DNA from: Mustelus asterias
Lineage: Eukaryota
DNA length: 64,000 bases
NCBI RefSeq assembly: GCF_964213995.1
Contig: NW_027590119.1
Coordinates: forward strand, 2,418,001 to 2,482,000
Reading direction: 5' to 3'
The translations under genes were made by a program, and so were the position numbers. The notes under the pieces are model-generated. The model worked only from the letters and a program-made list of their open reading frames with translations, had not been told where the DNA came from and did not search any database. This document shows positions 1,691 to 64,000 of the stretch, piece by piece; within the stretch, counting starts at the first letter, position 1; every line of letters begins with the position of its first letter.

Positions 1691-2229
1691 GTAAATATCT
1701 AAAATCTGCCTCCTTCACCCAACTTCTCCCACTTCTCTGTCCTTGTCCTATAGAAGCCAGTTTCTTGTATTGACACAGATCAGGTTCCCTTCTTTGAAAG
1801 ACATTAGTGAACCAGTCAGATTTTTAAGACAATCCAGTTTTCGTGGTCACTTTTTCCTTTACCCCACGCACTCTCTCTCCCTCAGCTCTCATAGAAGCCA
1901 GAGACATGTGTAGACCCAGACTGGATGGGCAGATTCCTTCCCTGAAGGACATTAGTGAACCAGTTGGGTTTTTATGACAATCGATCAGTTTTCTTGGCCT
2001 CTTTTCCCCAGTGCCGGCCCCACAAATTACCAGATTCATTCAGCTCAATTTCACAACCTGCCTTTGTGTTTGTGTGGGTTCTCTCTCACTCCCTTTTGCC
2101 TGTTTCAAATCAATTTCACAGGGACTGGAGTGGGACAATTTGCAGTCCGGGAACTGAAAACAAACATCATATCAGGAGCTGACGGAGTCACCCAATTTAT
2201 CATAACCTGAATATCAGTGGATTTTGATC

Positions 2230-2913
2230 ATGGAAGGAAAAAGCACCGTTCACAGTGGAGAGACACCATACACGTGTTCTGTGTGTGGACGAGGTTTCAG
2301 CCGATCAACTGGCCTGTCAAAACATAAGTGCAGTCACTCCATAGAGAAACTGTGGAAATGTGTGGACTGTGGGAAGGAATTTAATTACCCATCCCAGCTG
2401 GAAACTCATCAGCGCAGTCACACTGGGGAGAGGCCGTTCACCTGCTCTGAGTGTGGGAAGGGATTCACTCTGTCATCCCACCTACTTACTCATCAACGAC
2501 TTCACACCGGGGAGAGACCTTTTAAATGCTCAGACTGTGGGAAATGTCATAAAAGTTCCTGGGAATTGATGTCCCATCAACATGTTCACACTGACGAGAG
2601 ACCATACAGATGCTGTCACTGTGGGACTGGGTTCAGGCAATCGTATAGCCGTACTGCACATCAGCGAATTCACACCGGGGAGAGGCCGTTCACCTGCTCT
2701 GAGTGTGGGAAGGGATTCACTCGGTCATCCCACCTGCTGAGACATCAACGTACTCACACTGGGGAGAGGCCATTCAACTGCTCCAAATGTGGGAAGGGAT
2801 TCAGACAGTCATCTGAACTGTTGACACACGAACGCATTCACACGGGGGAGAGGCCACGTAAGTGGATTCATTCAATCATCCCATTTGCTGATACATCAGC
2901 GAGTTCACAGTGA
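2230..2913 (+). pseudogene. Tandem C2H2 (Kruppel-type) zinc-finger gene exon: 7 in-frame fingers, then frameshifted and truncated
   Basis: Seven CxxC...HxxxH fingers with TGERP linkers. Splice acceptor ...aatttcacAG at 2120-2121 and ATG at 2230. After the last TGERP a deletion shifts frame. The out-of-frame remnant [31 protein letters not shown] continues to about 2980, where a CR1 LINE begins. Confidence 0.85.
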
Positions 2914-6513: not shown

Positions 6514-6641
6514 CTTCACCAGAGTGACCGCAGTGCTGTAGAAAATGCTCAGGAAGAACAGGACAATGAATGTGGAAGCCGTTGTCCAGATGTTACTGTT
6601 ATCATCCTCATTGTCTTCAATCCAGATGCGGTCGGTTGAGT
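6514..6641 (-). CDS. IGHM: IgM TM1 exon
   Basis: 128-nt exon with AG/GT ends encoding (D)[42 protein letters not shown], which contains the conserved antigen-receptor transmembrane (CART) motif. Confidence 0.95.
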
Positions 6642-7513: not shown

Positions 7514-7638
7514 GAGTTGCCGGCGTTGGACTGGGGTCGGCACAGTAAGTACTCTCACAGCACCAGGTTAAAGTCCAACAGATTTATTTGGTTGCACGAG
7601 CTTTCGGAGCATTGCCCCTTCATCAGGTGACTACTTAC
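7514..7638 (-). mobile_element. Short Penelope-like insertion with target-site duplication
   Basis: Family A terminus flanked by the direct repeat TGTTTCCCTTTCTGTG at 7498-7513 and 7639-7654. Confidence 0.7.
7595..7629 (-). ncRNA. Minimal type I hammerhead ribozyme motif
   Basis: Minus strand reads CAC-CTGATGA-A-GGGGC-AAT-GCTCC-GAAA-GC-TC-GTG: core boxes, a paired stem II, stem I CAC/GTG, and palindromic AGCT in place of stem III. Confidence 0.65.
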
Positions 7639-7649
7639 TGTTTCCCTTT

Positions 7650-8238
7650 CTGTGTGCGTCTGTTTCTCCATGTGTCTGTGTGCACGCCTGTTGACATGTC
7701 AGTGTATGTATACACGTGTTGAAATTCTTTATAACGGTGCGTTGATGTATATTTGTGTTTCGATGTGTAGTCATGTGTGCTATGGTGTTTTGTTCTGTGA
7801 GCATGTTAATGTTTGCGTCTACATGTTTGTGTGTAAATGTTTTGCTGTCCGTTCTTCTGTATGCAGTCTGGTGATTTGTTTATATGTATTTCCATATATG
7901 TTTGTGAATGTGTATAACATTGTGTGTCTTTATATCTATATTCCTATCAGCGTGAACGTGTGCTAATATATGTATTTATTTGAGTCTAAGTATGTGCTTG
8001 TGTATTTATGTGGGTCTGCATGCGTGTGTATCTGTCTATTGTGTCTATGCATGTATGTGTTTGTGTTTGGGTCTGTACCTACTCACGTATGTGTATGTAC
8101 TTGTGTGTTTCATGTGTACATGTGTGCGTTTGTACATATTTGATTATGTGTGTGTGTGTTGTTGTTTTAGTGTCTGTTTGTACAAGAGCGCGTGTCTATG
8201 TGTTCGTATGTGTGTGTGTGTGTATGTGTGCGTGTGTA

Positions 8239-8271
<33 letters not shown>

Positions 8272-8750
8272 ATGGGTGTGTCCCTATGTATATTTGTGTA
8301 CGGATGTGTTTGTGTATGGGTGTATTTTTGTGTGGGTGTATTTGTGTAAGTGTGTATTTCTGTTTGTGCATGTGTTGCCCATGAATGCATTTGTGTGTGC
8401 ATTCTTGTTTCTCTGCATGTGTGTTCGTCTGTGCAAGTATTGAGTGTACCTATGGTGTGTGAAAGTGTATCTGTTGTGTATTTGTGTGTTTCTGTGTCTG
8501 TATTTGAATGTGCCTATCCCTATTTCTGTATATGGATGTGTGTGGGGGTATGTGCATGCGTTTGTGTGTGTATATTTACATGTGTCTTTCTGTATTTGTG
8601 TGCATATGTGTGAGTATGTGCATTTGTGTGTGCAGTTGTGCATTTGTGTCGATGTGTGTGTATGTGTGTGAGTGTGAGTGTGTGTGTGTGCGCTTATGTG
8701 TGTATTTATAATTGTGACAGTTTTGTGGAGTATTGTCAGTGTGTGTATTT
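7650..8750. repeat. Degenerate (GT)n/(GTAT)n low-complexity tract with a (GA)n run
   Basis: Seen directly. It accounts for the C/V-rich and H/T-rich spurious ORFs here. Confidence 0.9.
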
Positions 8751-9832: not shown

Positions 9833-10224
9833 TCATTGACATGAATTAACGGTGTCCATCAGTGCAAGGGAAATGTTCACAAAACTGGGTTTACCGCTGG
9901 ATTTGTCAACTGTTCTGTTGATGATCTTCAAGGGGATGGCTTCATGTCCCACCACACAGGAGTAAGAAGCACCGCTGGACCATTCCTCTGCTGCAATGGA
10001 TAACAGGCTGTACATGAAGAAGGAGCTATTCCCGCTCTCCGCGACCACCTCGGTGTTCTTATAGTTCCCAGGATTCACCGGCTTGTCGTTGACGGTCCAC
10101 TTGACGAAGATCTCTCGAGGGGAGAAACGTCTCACTAAGCAGCTGAGGGAGACGAATCTCTGAGCGGAGACTTCTTCTGCCGAGGGCAGGAGGACAGAGA
10201 CGAACGGTTCCCGCGGATTTGGAT
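9833..10224 (-). CDS. IGHM: IgM CH4 plus secretory tailpiece
   Basis: (D)[42 protein letters not shown]...[43 protein letters not shown]. The tail has an NIS sequon and a penultimate Cys. Internal donor G|GTAAA at 9895/9894 is in phase with TM1. Confidence 0.97.
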
Positions 10225-10726: not shown

Positions 10727-11035
10727 CTGTTTCCTTGTGGATGGATTTTCTTAAAGGAGTCGGCAGATCCTGATGGCTCACCACGCAGTCAAACACAGCC
10801 GCACTCAGCCAGGCTTGTGTCGAGATGTTTAAGTTGCTGACCACGCTGTCAGGATCCGCTCCAGGCTTTTCGGCAATCTCTGATTTCAAATACTTCCTGT
10901 CTCGGATCCAGGACACGTTGACTCCATAAGGAGCATTAGAAATGATGCAGGTTAAGGTCACGGTCGCCTCCAGTAAGACCTGTTCTATTGGTGGTGGCTG
11001 TATCGTCACTGTGGTATCAGGGCACTGGGGAGGAT
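10727..11035 (-). CDS. IGHM: IgM CH3 exon
   Basis: 309 nt, phase 1/1, AG/GT ends. Encodes (D)[29 protein letters not shown]...W...[22 protein letters not shown]. Confidence 0.96.
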
Positions 11036-11955: not shown

Positions 11956-12267
11956 CCAGAGATCCGCTGATGTTCTGACTCTGGGTGAATCCTTGATGAG
12001 TGACCTGGCAGGTATAGACCGCTTTGCTGATCCATTCCTGAGCGGAGACTGTCAGCCGACTGCTGGCCGAGAAGTTCCCGTTCACTTCACAGGCGGGAGA
12101 GGTGACAATTCCTGAATCCATGGGTTGTCCATTCTTCAGCCACTTCACCGTCATTGACTTTGGCTGGAAATCGATGATTGAACAGACGATGGTTGCAAAT
12201 TTTCTGCTGGTGATTTCTTCACTGGAACTCACGGTGAGGATAACGGTTGCCGGGAGAACGGGTGAGC
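11956..12267 (-). CDS. IGHM: IgM CH2 exon
   Basis: 312 nt, phase 1/1. Encodes (C)[46 protein letters not shown]...[21 protein letters not shown]. Confidence 0.96.
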
Positions 12268-12334
12268 CTTCAACAAACAAATGTTCAGACGTTACTTGAA
12301 GATTCAATTGACACCAATTAAAATTAGTTCTTTT

Positions 12335-13238: not shown

Positions 13239-13538
13239 ATTGCATTCCAATGCTCTTGACTGAGTCGCGGTGTCGAACCTCACACTTGATTTTGCTGCAC
13301 TCTCCCTCTGACTGGGTGATGGTTAACTGGCTGCTCAAGGTGTAAGTTCCCTTTGCGTTTCTCACTGATGGATAATTCTTAAATCCAGTGTCGATCAGCT
13401 GCCCATTTTTCTTCCAAGTCAGTTTGGAGACATCTGGAGAGTAGTCCATCGCCAAACAGCCGTAGGTGATGGAGCCAGCGGAGTTGTGTTGCTGACAGGA
13501 AGAGACGAGGCTGTAGAGAGTGGGCGGAGACGGTGTCG
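13239..13538 (-). CDS. IGHM: IgM CH1 exon
   Basis: 300 nt, phase 1/1. Encodes (A)[45 protein letters not shown]...[17 protein letters not shown]. The early Cys at the expected light-chain-bonding position is retained. Confidence 0.96.
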
Positions 13539-14747: not shown

Positions 14748-15318
14748 CCCACTCTCTGCCCATTTTCCCTGGCTCTCTGCCCTTTCCCCTGGCTCTCTGC
14801 CATTCCCTGTGGCTCCTTTCCCCTTTCACCCGGCTCTCTGCACTTCCACCTGGCTCTCGACACTTCCCTCCAGCTCTGTGCCCTCTCCCCCGGCTCTCTG
14901 CCCTTTCCCTCAGCACCCTACCCTTTCCCCCGGCTCTCTGTCCTCTGTCCCTGCTCACTATTCTCTTTCCCCTTTCCCATGGCTCTCTGTCCTTTCCCCC
15001 GGCTCTCTGCCCTTCCCCCCTGACTCTCTGTCTTTCCCCCTGACTCTCTGCCCTTTCCCCAGGGCTCTTTTGCACTTTTCGTCGGCTCTCTGTCCTTTCC
15101 CCGCCCTCCTTGCCCTTTATCCTGGCTCTCTCCTCTTTCCCTGATCTCTCTGCCATTTCCTCCATCTCGCTGCCTTTTCTCCTGTTTCTCTGCCCTTTCA
15201 CCTGGCTCCCTGCCCTTTCCATTGGCGCTCTTTCCCATTTCTCCTGGCTCTCTGCCCTTTCTCCTGGCTCTCTGCCCTTTCCCCCTGCTCTCGGCCCTTT
15301 CCCCAGACTCTGTGCCCT
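14748..15318 (-). repeat. About 21-nt polypurine tandem repeat, G-rich on the IgM sense strand
   Basis: Plus-strand unit approximately CCCCGGCTCTCTGCCCTTTCC, roughly 25 degenerate copies. Confidence 0.9.
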
Positions 15319-15519: not shown

Positions 15520-16643
15520 GCGAGTGTGAGTGAGAGAATGTGAGTGCGTGAGGGTGAGTGATTGAAGGAGTGAAAGTGGATGAGTGATGGTGTGTGAGTG
15601 ATGGAAGGTGGGTAAGTGAGGGTGAGTGATTGAGTGTGAGTGAGTAAGTCTGGGTGAGGGTGAGAGAACGTGAGTAAATGAGGGTGTGTGAGAGAGGGTG
15701 GGTGAGTGAAGGTGGCTGAATGTGTGAGTGAAGGTGGGTGAGTGAGTGTCGGTAAGAGAGAATGAATGAATGAGGGTGAGCGAGTGAGGATGCGTGAAGG
15801 TTACTGAAGGTGGGTGAGTGAGAGCGAGTGAATGAGGGTGAGGAGTGAATGTGACTTAGTAAGTGAGGGTGAGAGAGTGAGTGAGTCAGGGTGTGTTATT
15901 GAGGGTGGTGTGAGAGTGTGTGAGGGAGAATAAATGCGGATGGGTGGATGAGTGAGGGTGAGTGAGTGAAGGTGTTTGAGTGAGGATGAGTGATTGAGGA
16001 TCTGTGAGTTAGGGTGGGTGACCTTGAGTGATGGTGAATATGTGAGGGTGTGTGAGTGAATGTAGGTGCGTGAGTCTCAGTGAGTTTGAATGGGTCAGGT
16101 GGCGTACGTGAGAGAGAGAGGGTGATTGAGCTTGAGTGTGTGGGGGTGCGTCTGGGTGAGTGAGGGTCGGTAAGTGGGGAGAGTGAGTGAGGGTGAGTGA
16201 GAGTGATTGAGACTGGATAAGTGAGGGAGGGTAAATGCGGTGAGTGAGTGAGAGTGATTGAGACTGGATGAGTGAAGGTGCGTAACTGGGGTGAGTGAGG
16301 GTGAGTGAGAGTGAGTGAGACTGGATAAGTGAGGGTGGGTAAGTAGGGTGAGTGAGTGAGAGTGAGTGAGACTGGGTGAGTGAGGGTGGGTTAGTGGGAT
16401 GAGTGAATGAAGGTGACTATGAGTGTTGGTGAGTGACTGAGGCTCTGAGTGAGTGACTGAGGGTTAGTGAGTGAGGTTGAGTGAGTGATAGCACGTGATT
16501 GTGGGTGGCTGAGTGACAGTGAGTGAATGGGGATGAGTAAGTGAGGATGTGTGAGGGTGAGAGAGTGTGAGTGAGTGCTGGTGAGTGAATGAGGGTGTGA
16601 GTGTGAGTGAATGAGGGTGAGTGAGTGAATGCGAGTGAGTAAG
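15520..16643. repeat. Degenerate (GTGA)n/(GAGGGTGAGT)n tract
   Basis: Seen directly. Confidence 0.9.
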
Positions 16644-18334: not shown

Positions 18335-21300
18335 CAGATAGATCTGTTCAATCTGTCAATTTCATTCAAACTGTTGGATTCTAATTGATCAATGGCCAAC
18401 TTACAACAACAGAAAATTAATAACCTATTTTAAATTAAACTGATATTCATTTCAAAACTCCTTTCGACTGTTAATTATTCCTCTGTCTCACTTCTCGAAA
18501 GCTATGTAAAAATGTAATTTCGCCGAAAATGAGCAATCAAAAATAACAGATTCAGGACAGTTCAATGTCCCTAACAGAGATGCGGTGACACAGCAAGAAG
18601 TAACCAAATCAAGAAACATTTAGATTGAAAATCATTACCTGATTAGATCTAATTTCTTAATTAAATGTACTCAACAAATTAATCAAAGCAAAGCACTTTA
18701 TCGAGTGAGCACAGCTGAGTAAAGTAATGTTTTGTTTCTGAATACATTTCCGATACAATTGAATATTCTCTAAAACGGATTGTATTTTGCACGCCTGTAC
18801 AATATTCAAGGTAGTTTGTTTTGAATTAATCAGCAGCATTATTATATTTTAAGTTATTGTTAATTACTAGTTAGTTCTCCTGTCAGCTCATTTGTACTCT
18901 GTAATAAAATGGGTTTTCAATCATTCAAAATGTGCTTCTGCCTCCAACATTGTTAAATAATTAGGTTACAATTAAATCTTAGACAATGTTAAATATAATT
19001 TCAAATTACTGAACAGAAACATTCAGACATCTGTCATTCATTTACTTAAATCTAATCACATTGTAATATTTTACTTTTTCACTTTTACTACAAGTGTCTT
19101 ATTATAACCTGCAAAAGTGTTAAAATTGCATACTGCTGAATATGTATAGACTGTAACGGCCTGGCAGTTTGAAGTCAATAATACTGCTTCCAAGATTTAG
19201 TAATTTAGAACATCCATATAACTTAATTACTGAACACATTGTTTAATTAAAGAAGATCTGAATTAAACAGTGCAAACACAAAGAGGACAATTGATTCAAA
19301 TCCTCTGTAACACTAAAACATGATGCAGAATGTAAGTCCAGACTTTTTCTTCATTATAATATTTAATATGAATTAAACATAAGGTTCAGATAGAATCAAT
19401 TCTTCTATTCTGTCATTTATTCTTCCCATAATTCTATCCTGTGTTCAGCAGTAATGGGAGACATGATGTTATTATCAAGTGCAGAGATAAGATTATTTTT
19501 ATAGTATTTATAATAGTATAATATTTTTATTTAAATTAATCTTTTTGAATTTCAAGCATTAACTTGTCCATCTCTAGCCAGTTTCTGTTGACACTTTACT
19601 ACAATTCAAACACAATTATGTGAACAATTGCATGAGTGTCAGCGAATTCCACCTGTCAGAAAACTCTGTTCGCTCTGTCAAATTTATTCAAACTGTTTGA
19701 TTCTAATTGATCTAAGGTCAAATTACAACTGCAAAAAAGTCAATAAAAAATTTAAATTAACCTGATGTTCATTTCAAAACTCCCTTCGCCTTTTAACTAT
19801 CTCTCCCTGTCTGTCTCAAATCATGAAAACTGGGCAAAAATGTATTTTTTCTGAAAATGAGCACCTCAAATATAACAGATTCAGGGTAGTGTAATCTCCC
19901 TAACAGAGATACAGTGTCTCTGTAAGAATTGTAATTCATGATTTATTTTAATATGTAAGCATCAGTTAACTTGAATAAAAGTCCAAACATCTAATTATTT
20001 TATTTTTCCGAAACCTTTTTCCTTTATCCCTGCAAGAATTTTCAAACGCAGTTTTATTTTCATTTAGCCAGAAAACGTGTAACCGCTCAGTTTCACAGAG
20101 TTGAAACAATACAGAAACAATTGAGAAACACCAAACCATTTCACAAATTTTGAGATGAGATTAGTAATTAATTATCTCGGTATCCAATTACAAATTACTT
20201 GGAAGGAATAATCTGATTGCGACTGCACAGAAAGAAAATGTAATAATCGGATACATAAATTGCCAAAAAGCAACGTCTTATTCTGCAAAACTCGTATTCC
20301 AGTGAATGCGAACTTAATCTGGGATATAACGACTAATGCAAAGTATCTTGTTGAATTGAGCGCTGCTATGGAAACAGCACGTTATCATTGAAATAGTTTC
20401 TGGAATTATCACAAAATATTTCCAGCCCAGAAACTTTTCTGGTCATTTTAATTGAACAGAACTATTAGAGGTGATTAATGAATAATGATATTAACATAAA
20501 AAAATCTTTGGTGAATATGGAGTTATATTGCCGATCAATAATTGTTTGATTTATCTTAATTTCATGATCAAATTGGTTAATGAGAAGTTTGTGATTGCAG
20601 CAATGACTTAGTGTCCAAGTGAACTTTGTAAGTCATGATTTATTTTAATATTTAAACATTAGTTAAAATTTATAAAAATGTTGTGATATCTTGATTTCAT
20701 TTTTTTCCAAAACCTGCCTGTTTTCTACTACAAGGACTTTCAAACTCAGAGATTCTTTGCATTCAACCAGAAAACGTGTAACCGCTCAGTGCCGCCGAGT
20801 TTAAACAATGCAGAAACAATGCGGAAACACCAAATCACTTCGCAAATTTTAAACTATCATAGAATCTCCTGAACATAAACACTCCAAAGCACATCACTGA
20901 GGGAATTATTCCGCTTCATGAAGAAGCAGCTCAATTATTCATTCAACATAATAAAATGTAACATTGCAAGAAAATCTCAATATCGAATCCAGCAAAACAG
21001 CTCTTCACCAAATGTATGAATTATTAAACAAAACAGAAATCTGGAATAATAGCAATAGCATTGTGAAGAGATAGAATATATCCAACACATTAATATGGAA
21101 ACTTTACCACATTTTATTCATATTGGATCATATTTCAAACATATTTAAACATTTGGATGGTAAAAGCTGCAGCAATCACTGAGATTTAACATTGCAGGTT
21201 AACCAAATAGTGAATGCAGTGGCAAACTATATTCTGAACAAACTGCGTAAACTGTGATTTAGTTTAACCTGCAATTATCAATTATGATTTTCAAAAATGC

Positions 21301-22060
21301 CAATGGAATAAAGCCTGCCTGATTTCAACATATAATCATGCGTCAAGCAGTTTCAGACGCGAAGACTGTTTGTATTCAATCACAAAGTGTGTAACAGCTG
21401 TGTCACCGAGATTAAATAATGCAGAATCGCCAAACCATTTCAAAAATTTTACTTATTCAAAGTCACCCAGACCCACAATCTCCTCAACAGAAAAAATATA
21501 TATCACTGAACCCCGCATAATGCAGAAGCAGCTCAATTCTACAAACGCTTTCAATAGAATCAAATGTAACATTGACAGCAAATCTCAAATTTAAATCCAG
21601 CCAATCCGCTCATCACCAAACTAATCAATTATTAAATTAACAGAAATATGTCAGAACCACACCGGCATTGCGAGTAAGCGGAATATGATCACTCAATTAA
21701 TACAGAATCTTTAACACATTTTTAAAATATTGGGTTAGATTTCAAATGCGTGTGCAGCAGATGGCACAACCCGCAGCCACTAGATGTCACCGAGTTTATA
21801 CACTGCAGAAACATCGAACTGTTTAACAGAAGTTAGACAGTAACTTTTAAAGTAACCCAGCCACACAATGTCCTCAGCAGATAAACACCAAAATACAACA
21901 ACCAAGGATTGAATCCCTCAGCATCGCCTTGTCAATTAACAGTATAATTTTATAACCCCCATTTTCAGCAGAATCACATGAAACATTGTTCAGATTTTTA
22001 GTACAGAATCCGCCAAACCACATTTCAGTGAACGAATGAATTAATAAAATCGATAAAAAA
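18335..22060. repeat. AT-rich J-C intron segment built from degenerate internal duplications
   Basis: 18335-18600 resembles 19657-19930; 19930-20155 resembles 20627-20855; 20920-21160 resembles 21523-21750. Confidence 0.75.
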
Positions 22061-22113
22061 TATAAAACAAAAGCTCAAGTAAAACAGTTACTAAATAATT
22101 GCATGGTTCTTAC

Positions 22114-22162
22114 CTGCAGTCACCGTCACCATGGTCCCTTGTCCCCAAGTAGTCAAAGTAGT
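22114..22162 (-). CDS. IGHJ: JH segment (49 nt; FR4 WGQGTMVTVTA) with a 1-nt insertion before the Trp codon
   Basis: ACTACTTTGACTAC-T-TGGGGACAAGGGACCATGGTGACGGTGACTGCAG followed by donor gtaaga. Confidence 0.95.
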
Positions 22163-22201
22163 CACAGTGTCACATTCGCTTGGCTGGATCATACAATAAC
22201 T
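22163..22201 (+). promoter_or_regulatory. JH 5' recombination signal sequence with 23-bp spacer
   Basis: Heptamer CACAGTG 22163-22169, spacer 22170-22192, nonamer ACAATAACT 22193-22201. Confidence 0.93.
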
Positions 22202-22527
22202 GGCTCTGCAAAAAATAGACAGAAAAGCCGCCATTATTTTAAATATTCACAAACCTGAGGAAAAGCAAAGTCAATTAATATTCATGAGATTATTATTGTA
22301 TTTGTGGATACCGTTCGCTCTACATAAATAACCCTTATGTTTTGTATTTCACCGGGTATAACATGAACATGTTATTGAAAACACCAAATGATAATTGAAT
22401 AGTTATCATAAATTTTCCATTTGATTCTCGCTGTTTGTACAGAGCTGGGCATAAATAATACAGCACTGCAAATAATTTTGGATTGCAAAACAGAGCACTG
22501 ACCCAGTCTCGGTCAATTAGTGCTGAG

Positions 22528-22555
22528 GGTTTTTGTATTGACAGTAACTGATGTG
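22528..22555 (-). promoter_or_regulatory. D 3' recombination signal sequence with 12-bp spacer
   Basis: Heptamer CACATCA 22555-22549, spacer GTTACTGTCAAT, perfect nonamer ACAAAAACC 22536-22528. Confidence 0.9.
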
Positions 22556-22868
22556 CCACCCCAGACTCTTGCACAGTAATAGATGGCGGTGTCTTCGGTC
22601 TTCAGCCTTGTCATCTCCAAAGAGAAGATATTGGTTGAAGTGTCTTTAGACGCAGTAAATCGATCCTTAATTGCTGGGGCGTAGCTGTTGCTGGATGAAG
22701 TACGGTAGTAAACCAGCCACTCCAGCCCCTGCCCGGGAACCTGTCGGATCCAGTACATGTAAGCGCTGCTAAGACTGAAGCCGCTGGTTTTACAGGTCAG
22801 TGTCAGGGAGCCTCCGGGACGCCCTGTCTCTGCCTCTGGCTGAGTCAACACAACCTGCGTCTGGACAC
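22556..22868 (-). CDS. IGHV: VH exon germline-joined to a D segment (VD)
   Basis: Open frame (G)[52 protein letters not shown]...[36 protein letters not shown]. There is no RSS after YYCAR; about 10 nt (TCTGGGGTGG) run directly into a 12-RSS. Confidence 0.95.
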
Positions 22869-23000
22869 CTGTAAAAATAGATCAAAAAACCCGAGGATTA
22901 ATCCTGGTGTAATGATTTTTGACTCTGGAATATTACACAGATGGACTAAAACTGAGACAGGAACTGTGGGAGACTTAGACAATGAAAAATAACTACTCAC

Positions 23001-23046
23001 CGGATAAGAAAGTCAGCAACAAACTGAGAGAAATCGCCGACCTCAT
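23001..23046 (-). CDS. IGHV: IgH leader exon
   Basis: ATG at 23046, encodes MRSAISLSLLLTFLS plus one G, donor gtgagt, 132-nt intron to the V exon. Confidence 0.93.
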
Positions 23047-23137
23047 CCTTCTGGTAAGTTGGGGGAAATGGTTGTGTCAGGAACTCAATGAACAAACCAA
23101 CTCCCGGACTGTTGGATTCCGGTCCCAGTGAGCGGCA

Positions 23138-23164
23138 TTTAAATACCCGGCAGAAGGGGGCGGC
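23138..23164 (-). promoter_or_regulatory. VH core promoter: TATA-like box and GC box
   Basis: TATTTAAA at 23145-23138, about 90 nt upstream of the ATG, and a GC box GGGGCGGC at 23157-23164. No ATGCAAAT octamer was seen nearby. Confidence 0.6.
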
Positions 23165-26104
23165 TTTCCAGGCACCGTCGGTTGATTCCCTGCTGGAGGC
23201 GGCGACTGGATCCAGGTCCCACCTTCCACACCCCCAACAGAATGGACTTCCAGATTTACAATAGGTTAATATTAAAATGGACATTTTGTCTGTGTCGGGA
23301 TATTTGTTTGGCTGAATATGTCCATTGTATTGTCTCCATTATTTCTGATGGTGATATTGCAGTTCATCATTTCTTTATTTAAAATAACGAATTCCATTGT
23401 AAATATGGTGATTTTATTACCACGCCCCCAAGAAGAACACAAATCTAAAAGTGATGAAATTACATTTTTGGAAAATAAAGAGACCGTCAGTCTATTTTGC
23501 AACAATTCCGGGTCTCTGTCATATTACAATAATAAAGCATCATTTATCAGAATAACTTTTACCGATTTCTGTAACTAAATGAGGGGGTATGAACAAAGTG
23601 ATTGCATTTACAGTGTGGATGGCTATCACTGTACAATTTGGGTTTGGAGATGAGAAGAAACTCTCACACAATACAATGTTTCTCCTTATATTTGTCAAAC
23701 TGCCCCAATCTCGAAGACAGCTATTTGAAAATAATAAGAATCCTGCCCTCCTGATAATTAAATAGTGAGTTGACAGAGAAACATAAAGTTCTCCTTCAGC
23801 ATCCAGATCATTGCAGGTCACTCTATCGGCCACCGGCTGTCTAACATTCGCTGGTATTGCGAACACAAGATATCAGGGCTTTGCGGCAGATTGCACAATA
23901 TCACAAGAATAAATGTTTTATCTTCCATTGAATCAGGTTATGAACTGATCATTTCTCCACTTATTGGCAGCTATGATTGGAACTCTTCAAGAACAGGAAT
24001 CAGATTATACTGTATAGTAGAATAGGGTGTTAATCAGGTACAAGAGACGCTGCTGTTTAAATGCGATACAGAACGTTCAGAATATTCCAGGAATTCCCGC
24101 TGTTCGTGTCAGTTTTATGATGTTCCCTTAATATGATTTCGATGCATTTTATGCCATTGCACTGATTTCAATTGACTGGGGAATTGGGACCATCAACATC
24201 TCTCTCTCGCATTTCATGAAGTGGTTAATAAACTGACTTTAATTTGTGGAATGGCATTTACTTGGAAGTTATACAAATGAAAAAGCATCTGGTCACTTTA
24301 TTGTTTTGCGATACTATTTACTCACATAATGAAGAGGCCATTGAATGAAAATATTTGATTAGAATGATTACGATTTAAAATGTGTCTTTCTTGTGGGAAT
24401 GAAACATTTATTGTTTAAATGGCTGAATCCCATTTTGTCCATTCAGGTTCACGCTAATCTGTCCCACACAGTATTTGGCAGCAATCCAGCCTTCTGCCAA
24501 ATGCTCAAAGTTATTGACAGGAAGCATCTGGGGGTGTTGCGCAGCAGAACAAAGATCTGTTTCCTCAGTACTGACCGCTTGGCTGCAAGCCAACTTAAAA
24601 CCCTTCACATTGTCAATGAGGCCTATTTATAAACAAATCTACCCAGCAACAGTACTGGAGGCACTTTAATTTTTAAAAGTTGTAAATCTAGATGTATTTT
24701 TCCCATCTCTAATGAAAGGAAAGTTATGCAGCTTCTCTGGCACCCTGTTAGCAACAATGATGATTTTTCCAACACATCAGGATATTGTGATAGATGGATA
24801 GAAAGAATTACAGGCAAACTGAGAAATGTCTCAGAGAGACGATACATGAACATGTTTGTTTGTATTTTCTTTCCCTTTATCTTTCCATGGGATGTTTGGT
24901 TGCAAAGACCGGCACTTTTTGTCTGTCCCAAATTCCCTTGAACTGACTGGTTTTCTAGGCCACTTCTGAAGATATTAAAGAGTCAGCTATTTTGCTGTCC
25001 ATCTGGAGTCACATCCTTGTGAGACCAGGTAGCGATGGCAGATTTCACTCATTGGGGAATCAGAGAGGGTCCGATGGTCGCCATTAGCATCTGTTCCATA
25101 TTTATTAATTGAATTCATATTCCACCAGCTGCAATGCTCCGATTTAAATCCCTGTCCCCACATCATTGTCCTGGGTCTCTGGATCACTGGGCCACTTCAA
25201 TTAATATTACGTCACCATCTGTGCAAACAATAAATGAATGACTGTGTTGATGAAGGAATGAATGACCGTTGAATGAATGATATGAATATCAGTTGGATGG
25301 CTGAATATTTTGATTGAGGAATCAGTGAACGGATTGATGGATGCATTGTTAAATGGTACTGAAAGATGCTGTTCCACATTCCCATATTTGTACTTGACTG
25401 GTTCATAAATTGAAACAGTTCCTTGTTTCCATTTCTGTCAGTCTAATAACTTCAATACTTCCAGAAGGTCTGGGTGAAATCAAACCCGATTTTCGAGGGA
25501 GTTAGCAAGCTGATCCTCACGAAAAGAAGAGGGGATTTTCCTGCCGCACGGATGGTTCATTTCTCTGCTGATGCTGAATATTCATATCCAAGATCGAAAG
25601 AGGGAACATGATTTGGCTGAGGAGGGAGGATTGTAATATTTGAAACATGTGCAGCAAATCACTCACCATGCCCTCACCCAAATTAGTGAAGGTAACAAGC
25701 TGTAAAATAAATAATGTGGCAACAGATATATAGTGAAACTCACTGGAACTACAAGTGTTACATTATTTCTCAAAACTGTGTAATAATGAATCGGGATTTA
25801 AAGATTCAGTAAAATCATATTTGGTGCAGGTGGTTTAATTAGTATGATTACTTTGGAAATCATCACACCAGTTATGATTCAGGAGTTTAAAGCGCAGAGT
25901 CTGCTGGGTCGCTACTCATGATCCTCGGTCTGTATTCATTCAATTTCCAACTGAATTCTGGGACAGATTTTATCCTTGGTGACAAAAAGGTGTCAATAAA
26001 TGTTAATATCAATAAATTATTCAAAGCAAAGTTGTATAGAAGGAAATACTGGAAACAAACAGAAAATGCTGGAAGATCTCAGCAGGTCTGACAGCATCTG
26101 TGGA

Positions 26105-32863: not shown

Positions 32864-33384
32864 ATCTTCGGTTTTCAGTTATTTCCAAAGAGACGATGTC
32901 GTTTGAAGTATAAAAGCAAATTACTACGGATTCTGGAATTGAAACCAAAAGAGAAAATGCTGGAAAATCTCAGCAGGCCTGGCAATATCTGTGAGGAGAG
33001 AAAATAGCTGACATTTCGAATCCAGATGACCTTTTGACAAAGCTTTGACAAAAGGGTCATCTGGAATCGAAAAGTCAGCTCTTCTCTCTCCTTACAGATG
33101 CTGCCAGACTTGCTGAGATTTTCCAGCATTTTCTCTTGACGTTGTTTGAAGTGTCTTTGGGCGGAGTAAATTGATCCTGAATCCTGGGGCGGAGGAATTG
33201 TAGGTTGACCCAAGACTATCGTACTGAAGAAGACACTGTAAACACTGTTCAGGGACCTGTCGGACCCAGACCATCCAGTTTCTGCCAACATTGAATGCGT
33301 TGGCTTTGCAGGTCAGTCTCAAAGAGTTTCAGGGGCGCCCACTTTCTGCCTCTCGCTGGCTCAACACAACCTCCGATTCCACAC
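32864..33384 (-). pseudogene. IGHV: VH pseudogene, truncated in FR3, lacking leader and RSS
   Basis: EVVLSQREAESGRP*NSLRLTCKANAFNVGRNWMVWVRQVP... The acceptor AG is mutated to AA (33386-33385), there is a TGA at 33331-33329 and a frameshift in FR3. A 228-bp insertion follows; V resumes as IVSLEI..LKTED and then ends. Confidence 0.9.
32910..33137. mobile_element. Palindromic Penelope-like family B insertion inside the VH pseudogene
   Basis: Inverted arms over 32949-33137 centred on AAAGCTTT. 15-bp TSD GATGTCGTTTGAAGT (32895-32909) and GACGTTGTTTGAAGT (33138-33152). Confidence 0.75.
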
Positions 33385-33414
33385 TTGTAAAAATATCTAA
33401 GATCCTATGAAAAT

Positions 33415-36560: not shown

Positions 36561-38572
36561 TATAAGACCATAAGTCCATAAGACATAAGAAAGAGGAGCA
36601 GAATGAGGCCACTCGGTCCATCGAGTCTGCTCCCGCCATTCAATGATGGCTGACATTTTTCTCATCTATATTCTCTTGCCTTTTCCCCAGAACCACTGAT
36701 CCTCTTATTAATCACAAACCCATCTATCTCTGTCTTAAAAACACCCAATGACCTGGCCTCCAGCCTTCTGCGGCAAGAGATCCACAGATCCACCACACTC
36801 TGGCTGAAGAAATTCCTCCTCATCTCTGTTTCAAAGTATCGTCCCTTTAGTCTGAGGTTGTGCCCTCTGGTTCTAGCTTTTCCTACAAGTGGAAACATCC
36901 TCTCCACGCCCACTCTATCCAGGCCTCGCAGTATCCTGAAAGTTTCAATAAGATCTCCCCTCATCTTTCAAAACTCCAACGAATACAGATCCAGAGGACT
37001 CAACCGTTCCTCATACAGCAAGTCTTCATTCCAGGAATCATTCTTGTGAAACTCCACTGGACCTTTTCCATGGCCAGCACATCCTTCCTTAGATATGGGG
37101 CCCAAAACTGCTGACAATACTCCAATTGGGTCTGACCAGAGCCTTGTACAGCCTCAGAGGTACATCCCTGCTCTTGTATTCTAGCCCTCTCGACATGAAT
37201 GCTAACATTGCATTTGCCTTCCTGAACCTACACTTTAAACTTAAGAGAATCTTGAACAATGACTCCCAAGTCCCTTCGTATTTTTGATTTCCTCAGCATT
37301 TTCCCATTTAGAAAATAGTCTATGCCTCCATTCCTCCTTCCAAGCGCGTAACCTCACACTTTCCCAAATTGTATTCTAGCTGCCACATCTTTGCCGACTC
37401 TGCTAACCTGTCCAAGCCCTTCTGCAGCCCCCTGCATCCTCAATATTACCTGTCCCTCTACATATCTTTGTATCATCTGCAAACTTAGCAACAGTACCTT
37501 CAGTTCTTTCCTCCAAATCGCTAATGCATACTGTGAAAAGTTGTGGTCCCAGCACTGACCCCTGAGGCACACCACTAGTCACCGGCTGCCATCCTGAGAA
37601 AGACCCCTTTTTTCCCACTCTCTGCCTTCTGCCAATCAACCAATCCTCTATCCATGCCAGGATCTTACCCTTAACACCATGGGCATTTAACTTATTTAAC
37701 AGTCCCCTTTTCGGCACCTTGTCAAAGGCCTTCTGGAAATCTAAATAAATCATGTCCACTGGCTCTCATTTATCTAACTTCCTTGTTACCTCCTCCAAGA
37801 ACTCTAACAGATTTGTCAGATATTACCTCCCCTTCACAAAACTGTGCTGACTCATTCCTACTTTATCATGCCCTTCCATGTACTCTGCGGTCTCATCTTT
37901 GATAATGGAATTTAAAGTCTTGCCAATGACCGAAGTCAGGCTAACCGGCCTATAGTTTCTCGTCTGCTGCCTCCCTCCCTTCTTAAACAGTGGTGTTGCA
38001 TTCGCTACTTTCCAGTCCTCTGGTACATTCCCTGCCTCCAGTGATTTCTGAAAGACCACCACCAATGCCTCCACAATTTCCTCAGTTATCTCTTTTAGAA
38101 CCCTGCGGTGTAGTCCTTCCGGTCCAGGTGATTTATCCATCTTCAGACCTTTCAATTTACCCAGAATCTTCTCCTTAGTGATGGCCACTACAGTCACCTG
38201 TGCCCCTGGACTCTCCTGGAGCTCTGGCATTCCACTGGTGTCTTCCACCGTGAAGACTGATGCAAAGTAACTATTCAGTTCCTCTGCCATTGCTTTGTTT
38301 CCTGTTATTACTTCTCCAGTCTAATTTTCCAGTGGTCCAATGTCAATTTTTGCGTCTTTCTTACCTTTTATTATATTGAAAAGAACTCTCCATGTCTTAT
38401 TTTATATTACTAGCTGGCTGACACTCATATTTCATCTTCTCCCCCCTTATTGCTTTTTTACTTGTCCTCTCCTCGCTTTTAAATGCGTCCCAATCCTCTG
38501 GCTTCCCACTAATCTTTGCCGCTTTGTATGCTTTAGCTTTTGCTTTAATGCTGTGCTTGACCTTTATGCTGT
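36561..38572 (-). mobile_element. 5'-truncated, frameshifted CR1 LINE (reverse transcriptase region)
   Basis: ORF pieces include KSPGPEGLH...[25 protein letters not shown]...PQGSVLGP...KFADDTK and LRGDLIETFRIL. Tandem tail at about 36561-36590. Confidence 0.9.
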
Positions 38573-62609: not shown

Positions 62610-64000
62610 TAACATAGAACATAGAACATAGAACATTACAGCGCAGTACAGGCCCTTCGGCCCTCGATGTTGCGCCGACCAGTGGGACCAATCTAAAGCC
62701 CCTCTAATCTACACTATTCCAATATCATCCATATGTTTATCCAATAACCACTTGAACGCTCTCAACGTTGACGAGTCCACCACTGCTGCAGGCAGGGCAT
62801 TCCACGCCCTTACTACTCTCTGAGTAAAGAACCTACCTCTAACATCTGTCCTATATCTCTCACCCCTCAATTTAAAGCTATGTCCCCTCGTGCTAGCCAA
62901 CACCATCCGAGGAAAAAGGCTCTCACTATCCACCCTATCTAATCGTCTGATCATCTTGTGTGCCTCTATTAAGTCACCTCTTAACCTTCTTCTCTCGAAC
63001 GAAAACAACCTCAAGCCCCTCAGCCTTTCCTCATACGATATTCCCACCATACCAGGCAACATCCTGGTAAATCTTCTCTGCACCTCCACATCTTTCCTAT
63101 AATACGGCGACCAGAACTGTACGCAATACTCCAAATGCGGCCGCACCAGAGTTTTGTACAGTTGCAGCATGACCTCTTGGCTCCGAAACTCAATCCCTCT
63201 ACCAATAAAAGCTAACACACCGGACACCTTCTTAACAACCCTATCAACCTGGGTGCCAACTTTCAGGGATCTATGCACGTGGACACCCAGATCCCTCTGT
63301 TCATCCACACTACCAAGTATCTTACCATTAGCCCAGTACTCTGTATTCATGTTACTCCTTCCAAAGTGAATCACCTCACACTTTTCCGCATTAAACTCCA
63401 TTTGCCATCTCTCAGCCCAGCTCTGCAGCTTATCTATGTCCCTCTGTAACCTGCCACTTCCCTCCGCACTGTCTACAACTCCACCGACTTTAGTGTCATC
63501 CGCAAATTTACTAAACCATCCTTCCACGCCCTCATCCAAGTCATTAATAAAAATGACCAGCAGCAGTGGCCCCAAAACAGATCCTTGCGGTACACCACTA
63601 GTAACAGAACTCCAGGATGAATATTTCCCATCAACCACCACCCTTTGCTTTCTTACAGCTAGCCAATTCCTGATCCAAACCACAAATCACCCTCAATCCC
63701 ATGTGTCCGTATTTTCTGCACAAACTTACCATGGGGAACCTTATCAAACGCTTTGCTGAGATCCATATACACCAAATCAACCGCTTTACCCTCATCCACC
63801 TCTTTGGTCACCTTCTCAAAGAACTCAATAAGGTTTGTGAGGCACGACCTACCCTTCACAAAACCGTGCTGACTATCCCTAATCAAATTATTCCTTTCTA
63901 GGTGATTATAAATCCTATCTCTTAGAATCCTTTCCAATACTTTGCCCACAACAGAAGTAAGGCTCACCAGTCTATAATTACCAGGGTTGTCCCTACTCCC
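62610..64000 (-). mobile_element. Young CR1 LINE, ORF2 RT and C-terminal region (runs off the window edge)
   Basis: ORFs 63659-63967 and 62709-63683 are joined by one frameshift. Motifs [19 protein letters not shown] and FADD. 3' tail (GTTCTAT)n at about 62610-62636. Confidence 0.93.

What the first reader, a model, noticed from the sequence alone, without database searches (positions are those of the whole stretch)
22528..22581. Partially germline-joined VD-J IgM cluster needing only one RAG step
Seen: the VH frame runs TAT TAC TGT GCA AGA GTC TGG GGT GG straight into a 12-spacer RSS. There is no V-RSS, no separate D1 and no 5' D-RSS. A 23-spacer JH starts 393 nt later, and every C/TM exon is intact. 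Known: typical shark IgM clusters are V-D1-D2-J-C, and germline-joined variants exist in elasmobranchs, attributed to RAG activity in germ cells. Inference: V joined to the J-proximal D (direct V-to-D2, or with D1 trimmed away), fixing ARVWG as a hard-wired CDR3 start. Diversity would be limited to one junction, giving short, semi-invariant CDR3s. The gene class is known, but this allele may be undescribed.
Basis: partly seen in the sequence, partly recalled or inferred. Interest (0 to 1): 0.85.

Follow-up and report, generated by a model that had tools for sequence, protein, structure and literature searches.

The report
Germline VD-joined shark IgM cluster
This is a shark antibody (IgM) gene cluster whose V segment is already fused to a D segment in the assembled genome, so one more DNA-joining step would complete the gene; such clusters have been known in sharks since the 1980s.

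Summary
On the minus strand an intact leader and VH exon run CAR + 11 nt straight into a 12-spacer RSS (CACATCA / 12 nt / ACAAAAACC, 22555-22528). A 23-spacer RSS and a JH follow 393 nt later. CH1-CH4, the secretory tail and TM1 are open with plausible splice sites.

Contigs of public runs laid on the locus show paralogues with an unjoined V (coding end, then a CACAGCG heptamer) and an unjoined 13-nt D with RSSs on both sides. Against these, the junction reads as V trimmed by 2 nt, one extra T, then D trimmed by 4 nt. That is a RAG-type coding joint, not a V with a native 12-RSS.

The paralogue D has a 12-spacer RSS on its 5' side too, so a direct V(23)-to-D(12) join is allowed.

Germline VD-J and VDD-J clusters are an established class in cartilaginous fish. 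Gene models from two other shark assemblies have tails compatible with the same layout. First-stage notes list another 'germline-joined VD' and many other joined states elsewhere in this genome.

Not shown: read-level support across the junction, presence in non-lymphoid DNA, and expression.

Verdict: a real feature, a new member of a known kind, of modest interest.

The parts
23001..23046 (-). Leader exon (ATG at 23046; 46 nt, ends in phase 1 before a gtgagt donor)
   Evidence: Read. The leader resembles those of shark VH models in alignment A1.
22869..23000 (-). Leader intron (gt...ag)
   Evidence: The frame is continuous from the leader into the V exon.
22566..22868 (-). VH-derived part of the V exon, ending ...TGT GCA AGA G
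   Evidence: Pfam V-set E = 6.3e-18. 81% identity to a Scyliorhinus torazame model and 76% to HV01_HETFR. Paralogue contigs match rightwards from 22566 and diverge to its left (table 7).
22565..22565 (-). Single junction base T, not explained by the paralogue V end or the paralogue D (an N/P base, a D1 remnant or a later substitution)
   Evidence: Comparison of the window with the loose ends.
22556..22564 (-). D-derived 9 nt, CTGGGGTGG
   Evidence: Contigs in X1 (2) and X5 (2) match the window up to 22564 and then continue into 4 more D bases and a 5' heptamer (table 7).
22528..22555 (-). 12-spacer RSS 3' of the fused D: heptamer CACATCA (4/7 to consensus, CAC kept), 12-nt spacer, nonamer ACAAAAACC (9/9)
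   Evidence: 1 match, 0.01 expected.
22202..22527 (-). D-J intervening sequence, with no further RSS or D
   Evidence: scan. X1 contig record 5 covers 22322-22559 with 1 mismatch (table 8).
22163..22201 (-). 23-spacer RSS of JH (nonamer AGTTATTGT, 23 nt, heptamer CACTGTG)
22115..22162 (-). JH coding segment (48 nt; the WGQGTMVTVTA frame reads TTLTT upstream because of one extra T), followed by a gtaaga donor
13239..13538 (-). Cmu1 exon
   Evidence: C1-set E = 4.2e-13. Splice sites by eye.
11956..12294 (-). Cmu2 exon
   Evidence: C1-set E = 2e-20. Splice sites by eye.
10727..11035 (-). Cmu3 exon
   Evidence: C1-set E = 6.7e-09. Splice sites by eye.
9833..10224 (-). Cmu4 exon with secretory tail and stop codon
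   Evidence: C1-set E = 2.7e-21. ORF.
6514..6641 (-). TM1 exon (acidic linker plus hydrophobic membrane span)
   Evidence: Open frame; ag acceptor and gtgaga donor. No Pfam hit, so the assignment rests on the sequence pattern only.

Best explanation
This is a cartilaginous-fish IgM minilocus (leader-V...J...Cmu1-4, TM) in which V was joined to the J-proximal D by a RAG-type coding joint in the germ line of an ancestor. The V-D interval, and D1 if the ancestral cluster had one, were deleted. What remains is a VD exon carrying the D's own 3' 12-spacer RSS, about 0.4 kb upstream of a JH with a 23-spacer RSS. In a lymphocyte, one 12/23 recombination between these two RSSs would complete the VDJ exon. 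CDR3 would then start from the fixed C-A-R-V-W-G(G), and junctional diversity would arise only at the VD-J joint, with hypermutation afterwards. Shown here: the anatomy, the intact exons, and the trimming pattern relative to unjoined paralogues. Inferred: the germ-line origin, RAG as the agent, and that the cluster still rearranges and is expressed.
For: The anatomy was read directly. The 12-RSS is unique in the window (1 match, 0.01 expected). No other RSS lies between V and J. Paralogue contigs (table 7) fall into two groups. In the first, contigs that match V from 22566 rightwards are preceded by ...CTCGCTGTGGT (2 contigs in X1, 3 in X3, 1 in X4). That is two more coding bases, a CACAGCG heptamer and at least 21 nt with no nonamer at the 12-nt position. 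In the second, contigs match the RSS and D up to 22564 (2 in X1, 2 in X5) or 22561 (1 in X3). They then continue with 4-6 more D bases, a CACAGTG heptamer, 12 nt and ACAAA. This is a free D with RSSs on both sides, and its 3' flank is about 91% like this locus (X4 record 20: 189 letters, 14 mismatches, 3 gaps). The junction is therefore V minus 2 nt, plus T, plus D minus 4 nt, which is the signature of a coding joint. The leader-to-J span is 932 nt, against about 1.75 kb noted by first readers for unrearranged L-V-D1-D2-J cassettes in this genome (unchecked). That fits the loss of two intersegment gaps. All exons are open. [quoted passage not shown] Other sharks give the same picture. Of the 6 of 9 fetched models with more than 3 residues after YYC, the tails of P0001 (S. 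torazame) and P0004 (C. punctatum) can be back-translated to a 12-RSS 31 and 26 nt after the Cys codon. P0002 fits a 23-RSS 9 nt after it (an unjoined V). P0009 (whale shark) is a fully joined VDJ.
Against: No contig listed bridges the V-D junction with 31 or more letters on each side; 1061 pieces were not shown. The join therefore rests on the assembly alone. All runs laid were contigs of unknown tissue, so nothing here shows the join in non-lymphoid DNA. No run on record as RNA held the stretch, so expression and VD-to-J joining are untested. The heptamer CACATCA matches the consensus at only 4 of 7 positions. No perfect ATGCAAAT octamer lies near the promoter. The J has an extra T that removes the usual YFDY reading. 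Lee et al. [quoted passage not shown] Somatic VDD-J intermediates are frequent in nurse shark thymocytes (PMC2435157, passages), so the same structure can also arise somatically.
Confidence: 0.85

Rival explanations
1. The join is inherited, but the cluster is a silent relic. The weakened heptamer, the shifted J reading and the lack of an octamer would mean it rarely or never gives a productive heavy chain.
For: The heptamer matches at 4/7. The extra T in J is shown. No ATGCAAAT lies within the promoter region. No RNA holder was found. Expression of joined H genes was not detected in horned shark (PMC2193156, passage). A broken V lies 10 kb upstream, so decay does occur in this neighbourhood.
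Against: All ten coding pieces examined are open with consistent splice phases over 17 kb. CAC of the heptamer and 9/9 of the nonamer are kept. A non-consensus ending of this heptamer (positions 6-7 CA or CN) is also compatible with the S. torazame and C. punctatum models (back-translation only), so it may be the native form. In X1 most contig depth at 22147 keeps the extra T (414.9 of 1948.5 lacks it, table 4), so that J form is common among copies.
Confidence: 0.35
2. The join is a somatic VD(D)-J intermediate from a lymphocyte, or a chimeric assembly of two clusters, and is not the inherited state.
For: Somatic VDD-J intermediates are abundant in nurse shark thymus and occur in B cells (PMC2435157, passages). 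No bridging contig is listed. The gene family is highly repetitive: 373 contigs were laid in X1 alone, and 66 of them were under 90% alike.
Against: Each somatic junction is unique to a clone, so it should be outvoted in a consensus assembly (inference). The break sits exactly at the RSS-defined coding ends on both sides, which random chimerism would not give. The X1 contig over the D-J spacer and RSS has the same word depth (125.5) as the unique flanks (133.2 and 138.6, table 8). First-stage notes list many joined states elsewhere in this genome (unchecked). Models from two other shark assemblies are compatible with the same layout.
Confidence: 0.06
3. This V family natively carries a 12-spacer RSS and the 11 bases are simply a long V coding end. 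No D was ever joined.
For: Only that the V frame runs on without a stop.
Against: Nine of the 11 bases and the whole RSS with its 3' flank recur in contigs where they form a separate D with its own 5' RSS. Paralogue V ends carry a different heptamer and spacer directly after the coding end (table 7). P0002 is compatible with a 23-RSS 9 nt after Cys.
Confidence: 0.02

Closest known systems
Germline-joined VD-J / VDD-J IgM clusters of horned shark (Kokubu et al. 1988, known to me only through citing passages in PMC2193156 and PMC2193153, and from recall)
   Same: A cluster-type IgM gene with V fused to D in inherited DNA, a retained 3' D RSS, an unjoined J and a full Cmu gene. The origin is attributed to RAG activity in germ cells.
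   Different: The species differs: V is 76% identical to HV01_HETFR. The D-derived part is short (9 nt plus 1), so D1 is either absent or fully trimmed. I could not read the 1988 paper (not held), so the junctions could not be compared.
Somatic 2R 'VDD-J' intermediates of nurse shark IgH (Malecek et al. 2008, PMC2435157, passages read)
   Same: The same end product: V, D1 and D2 fused, the D2-J interval and both its RSSs intact, and one step from VDJ.
   Different: Those are clone-specific products in thymocytes and B cells. This one sits in a genome assembly with RAG-type trimming but almost no added bases.
Nurse shark IgM1gj (fully germline-joined VDJ expressed in neonates; reviews PMC5192425 and PMC4279169, passages read)
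   Same: A heavy-chain V region pre-assembled in the germ line. It is a candidate source of a restricted early repertoire.
   Different: IgM1gj is fully joined and lacks Cmu2. This cluster still needs one recombination and has four Cmu exons.
Gene models scyTo_0022151 (S. torazame, P0001) and chiPu_0018910 (C. punctatum, P0004)
   Same: V is followed by extra residues, and the tail can be back-translated to a 12-RSS. P0001 shares the run QLLSIQK with the other-frame reading of this RSS, which implies a nearly identical spacer and nonamer.
   Different: They have longer D-derived stretches (RSS 31 and 26 nt after Cys, against 17 here). Only protein sequences were seen, with no DNA or context.
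Partially germline-joined VH of the opossum (Wang and Miller 2012; seen only as a reference entry in PMC8355894)
   Same: A VD fusion in the germ line that still recombines with J.
   Different: It is a mammalian translocon locus, not a cluster. I did not read the paper.

Membership tests
Germline partly joined (VD-J) Ig heavy-chain cluster of cartilaginous fish | Cluster organisation: one V, one J and one set of Cmu exons on one strand within a short unit | tested here: met
   Leader at 23046 down to TM1 at 6514, all on the minus strand.
Germline partly joined (VD-J) Ig heavy-chain cluster of cartilaginous fish | V coding sequence continuous with D-derived bases; no V-RSS and no 5' D-RSS | tested here: met
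   Nine bases are identical to the 3' part of a free paralogue D.
Germline partly joined (VD-J) Ig heavy-chain cluster of cartilaginous fish | The junction looks like a coding joint relative to unjoined relatives (end trimming, few added bases) | tested here: met
   V minus 2 nt, plus T, D minus 4 nt, from the loose ends. The relatives are short contigs of coded runs, not full clusters.
Germline partly joined (VD-J) Ig heavy-chain cluster of cartilaginous fish | Remaining RSS pair compatible under the 12/23 rule | tested here: met
   A 12-RSS at 22528-22555 and a 23-RSS at 22163-22201.
Germline partly joined (VD-J) Ig heavy-chain cluster of cartilaginous fish | The join is present in non-lymphoid (inherited) DNA | tested here: inconclusive
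   One search listed no contig bridging 22556-22575. X1 record 5 stops at 22559. Tissue of the runs is unknown. Only the assembly itself shows the join.
Germline partly joined (VD-J) Ig heavy-chain cluster of cartilaginous fish | The cluster completes VD-to-J joining and is transcribed in lymphocytes | not testable with these tools
   No run on record as RNA held the stretch. The single searches of the look-up of sequencing runs and read laying are spent.
IgM (mu) heavy chain | Four C1-set constant domains, a secretory tail ending in Cys plus one residue, and a separate TM exon | tested here: met
   Four C1-set hits. The tail ends ...NSCQ. TM1 is open with a hydrophobic span.

The most novel reading that the evidence does not exclude
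The cluster arose by a direct one-step germ-line join of V (23-RSS) to a J-proximal D that carries 12-spacer RSSs on both sides. That is the RSS-swapped cluster type which Lewis and Wu describe for horned shark. The join deleted D1 outright. The resulting hard-wired C-A-R-V-W-G start is kept by selection as an innate-like, early-life IgM specificity, in the manner of nurse shark IgM1gj but with one tunable junction.
Probability: 0.1. Interest if true: 0.55.

Novelty: new member of a known kind. Interest (0 to 1): 0.25.

Why it matters
Germline-joined Ig genes are the standing evidence that RAG has acted in vertebrate germ cells. They are also candidates for pre-formed antibody specificities in newborn sharks. 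This cluster is a clean example: every exon is open, and the V and D ends can be assigned almost base by base against unjoined relatives. It adds one locus to a known list and does not change the picture. Its practical value is as a marker. CDR3s starting CARVW(G) with this V would show whether partly joined heavy-chain clusters are used at all, a point left open for horned shark in the passage of PMC2193156 that I read.

Tried and rejected
The reading of a native 12-RSS on V was rejected on the loose ends. A hybrid joint (V coding end fused to a swapped RSS, with no D) was also rejected. Nine D bases sit between V and the RSS, and the RSS with its 3' flank is collinear with a free D in paralogues.

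I looked for a hidden D2 between the two RSSs and found none (and reading).

In the V frame the D plus RSS reads [10 protein letters not shown], which resembles a J (W-G-G-T-x-V-T-V), so I asked whether this could be a disguised fully joined VDJ. I rejected that. One residue of the WGxG motif is missing, no splice donor follows, a stop comes 9 codons later, and the same bases form a D with its RSS in paralogues. The C. punctatum tail (P0004) is not J-like at this place.

The species was not identified. The best V hits are 81% (S. torazame), 80% (C. punctatum) and 76% (H. francisci). I ran no further search on it.

Whether the free paralogue D is D2 of a two-D cluster, the single D of a one-D cluster, or a trimmed D1-D2 fusion could not be settled from 30-letter loose ends.

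Searches for the D motif in papers (6 papers, none relevant) and for earlier findings by sequence (blank) led nowhere. Kokubu et al. 1988 is not held. PMC12227049 added nothing on this point. Figures S1 and S11 of PMC2435157, which hold nurse shark D1 and D2 germline sequences, might have helped to name the D.

Exons were searched one by one.

Full report
**What is there.** The finding lies on the minus strand.
- A 46-nt leader exon starts at 23046 and is followed by a 132-nt intron.
- The V exon starts at 22868 and stays in frame through ...[14 protein letters not shown].
- Directly after TGT GCA AGA GTC TGG GGT GG (last base 22556) come CACATCA, 12 nt and ACAAAAACC (22555-22528).
- The pattern CAC-N16-ACAAAAACC occurs once in the window. 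Shuffles give 0.01 on average, and 1 of 100 shuffles had a match.
- A scan for RSS-like sites listed 48 sites in the window under my relaxed rule. None lies between V and this RSS, and none between this RSS and the J RSS.
- The J RSS (22163-22201) has a perfect heptamer, a 23-nt spacer and a 7/9 nonamer. J coding runs 22162-22115 and ends at a gtaaga donor.

**The constant region.** Downstream (lower coordinates), four open exons each match Pfam C1-set. The fourth ends in a secretory tail and a stop codon. An open TM1 exon lies at 6641-6514. GT/AG sites in a consistent phase flank each exon by eye. TM2 was not located. I searched exons singly and built no spliced model. The window has no N run.

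**What the extra 11 bases are.** One run search gave 20 runs, all kept as contigs. None held half of the sampled words, and none was on record as RNA. I laid four runs on 21000-24000 at 85% likeness: X1, X3 and X4 (organism A, three samples) and X5 (organism B). Many contigs are 99% or more alike: 108 of 373 in X1, 69 of 255 in X3, 38 of 123 in X4 and 61 of 295 in X5. The same or a very close species is therefore present, together with many paralogues. Two groups of loose ends are informative.

- **Unjoined V.** Contigs that fit V from 22566 rightwards are preceded by ...CTCGCTGTGGT (2 contigs in X1, 3 in X3, 1 in X4; 2 more in X4 start at 22567 with a variant end). On the coding strand, the paralogue V runs two bases further (AC). 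Then come a CACAGCG heptamer and at least 21 nt with no nonamer at the 12-nt position. This is an ordinary unjoined V.
- **Free D.** Contigs that fit the RSS and D up to 22564 (2 in X1, 2 in X5) go on with TTATCACAGTGAGACAC. One in X3 fits to 22561 and goes on with AGTTATCACAGTGAGACACAGCATGACAAA. On the coding strand this is the end of a nonamer, a 12-nt spacer, CACTGTG, and then a 12-13 nt D whose last 9 bases, 3' RSS and 3' flank match the window. A contig of that geometry in X4 (record 20) is about 91% like 22376-22561.

The junction here therefore reads as V minus 2 nt, one T, then D minus 4 nt. That is what a coding joint looks like. It disposes of the alternative that V owns the 12-RSS.

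**Which D.** The free D in the paralogues carries a 12-spacer RSS on both sides.
- A commentary on horned shark clusters (PMC2193153, passages) says two V-D-D-J clusters differ by an inversion of the D1-D2 interval. It attributes this to a germ-line hybrid joint that swaps 12- and 23-spacer RSSs.
- If that cluster type exists here, the J-proximal D can be 12/12, and V (23) may join it directly and delete D1.
- The alternatives are a V-D1-D2 join with D1 trimmed to nothing, or descent from a cluster with a single or pre-fused D. First-stage notes list such 12/12 D clusters elsewhere in this genome (unchecked).
- Leader to J spans 932 nt here, against about 1.75 kb in the notes on unrearranged cassettes (unchecked). 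That fits the loss of two intersegment gaps.
- I cannot choose among these routes from 30-letter loose ends.

**Is the join inherited?** This is the weak point.
- No listed contig bridges the junction. X1 record 5 covers 22322-22559 with 1 mismatch and stops inside the D, which is expected where paralogue words converge. A further 1061 pieces were not shown.
- Somatic VDD-J intermediates do exist in sharks (PMC2435157, passages).
- Against a somatic or chimeric origin: clone-specific joints should not win a consensus assembly (inference); the break lies exactly at RSS-defined coding ends; and first-stage notes list another 'germline-joined VD' and VD-D-J, V-DD-J, V-D-DJ and VDJ clusters on other pieces of this genome (unchecked).
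- Other shark assemblies show the same thing at protein level. Of the nine best shark hits to the V exon, six have more than three residues after YYC. By back-translation, P0001 (S. torazame) fits a 12-RSS 31 nt after Cys with 1 mismatch. P0004 (C. punctatum) fits one 26 nt after Cys with 0 mismatches. P0002 fits a 23-RSS 9 nt after Cys with 1 mismatch. P0007 and P0008 fit neither within 2 mismatches.
- P0009 (whale shark) reads CARDWGGSLHYWGQETMVTVTA, a fully joined VDJ.
- P0001 shares the run QLLSIQK with the other-frame reading of this RSS.

**How it would work.** One 12/23 recombination between 22528-22555 and 22163-22201 would delete 393 nt and complete VDJ.
- The VD end carries two bases of an open codon, and the J reads in frame from its first base. 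Productive joints therefore need a net +1 nt (mod 3), the ordinary one-in-three odds.
- CDR3 would begin C-A-R-V-W-G(G), less any trimming, and vary only at that joint.
- Points against efficient use: a heptamer at 4/7 (CAC kept), no perfect octamer near the promoter (a TATA-like TATTTAAA lies about 100 nt before the ATG), and the extra T in J.
- No expression data could be obtained.

**Comparison with what is known.** Reviews and primary papers (passages read) state that cartilaginous-fish Ig clusters may be partly (VD-J, VD-DJ) or fully joined in the germ line. They add that VD and VDD joined H-chain genes occur in horned shark, and that RAG activity in germ cells is the accepted cause. The original 1988 paper was not available to me. 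This locus meets every sequence-level feature of that class. Presence in non-lymphoid DNA and use in lymphocytes are untested. It is a new member of a known kind. I found no print description of this allele, but my searches were not designed to exclude one, and the species is unidentified.

**Verdict.** It is a real feature of an established class. Interest 0.25.

Noticed in passing
window 22115-22162 (minus), extra base at 22147/22148: JH has one extra T, so the frame that gives WGQGTMVTVTA reads TTLTT upstream instead of YFDY. In laid contigs the base is missing in 414.9 of 1948.5 depth in X1, 7.02 of 86.6 in X3 and 48.9 of 55.8 in X5 (table 4). Both J forms therefore exist among copies or species. 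The same point is made in first-stage note s1-892433.
   Followed up: partly
window 22528-22566 (minus): Read in the V frame, the D plus its 12-RSS gives [10 protein letters not shown], which resembles a J region with one residue missing from WGxG. A stop follows 9 codons later and there is no splice donor. It is probably chance or lineage-specific, because the C. punctatum tail (P0004) is not J-like here.
   Followed up: partly
window 22528-22555 (minus) and protein P0001: The other-frame reading of this RSS ([12 protein letters not shown]) shares QLLSIQK with the tail of a Scyliorhinus torazame gene model. This implies that the 12-nt spacer and the nonamer of the J-proximal D are nearly unchanged between shark lineages. 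A non-consensus heptamer ending also seems shared.
   Followed up: partly
window 14752-15318 and 15522-16640: The J-Cmu1 intron holds a 20-nt tandem repeat (27.5 copies, G-rich on the coding strand) and a 14-nt GAGGGTGAGTGAGT array (79 copies, G-rich on the other strand). GC skew reaches 0.65 at 16-18 kb. First-stage note s1-892553 calls the first array switch-region-like. I did not test that.
   Followed up: partly
window 33090-33400 (minus): A second VH-like exon lies 10 kb upstream (71% DNA identity over 255 nt; 44% protein identity). It has a shifted frame and runs into unrelated, repeat-like sequence before the YYC end. It is a broken orphan V with no D, J or C of its own in the window.
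   Followed up: partly
window 2224-2913 (plus); 37823-38290 and 62709-63683 (minus): A multi-finger ORF with repeated C2H2-type zinc-finger motifs lies below the TM exons. ORFs that look like reverse-transcriptase fragments lie upstream of the cluster. Both were judged by eye only.
   Followed up: no
window 7600-8700: Long TG/CA-rich low-complexity sequence lies between the Cmu4 and TM1 exons. It gives many spurious Cys/Val- or His/Thr-rich ORFs on both strands.
   Followed up: no
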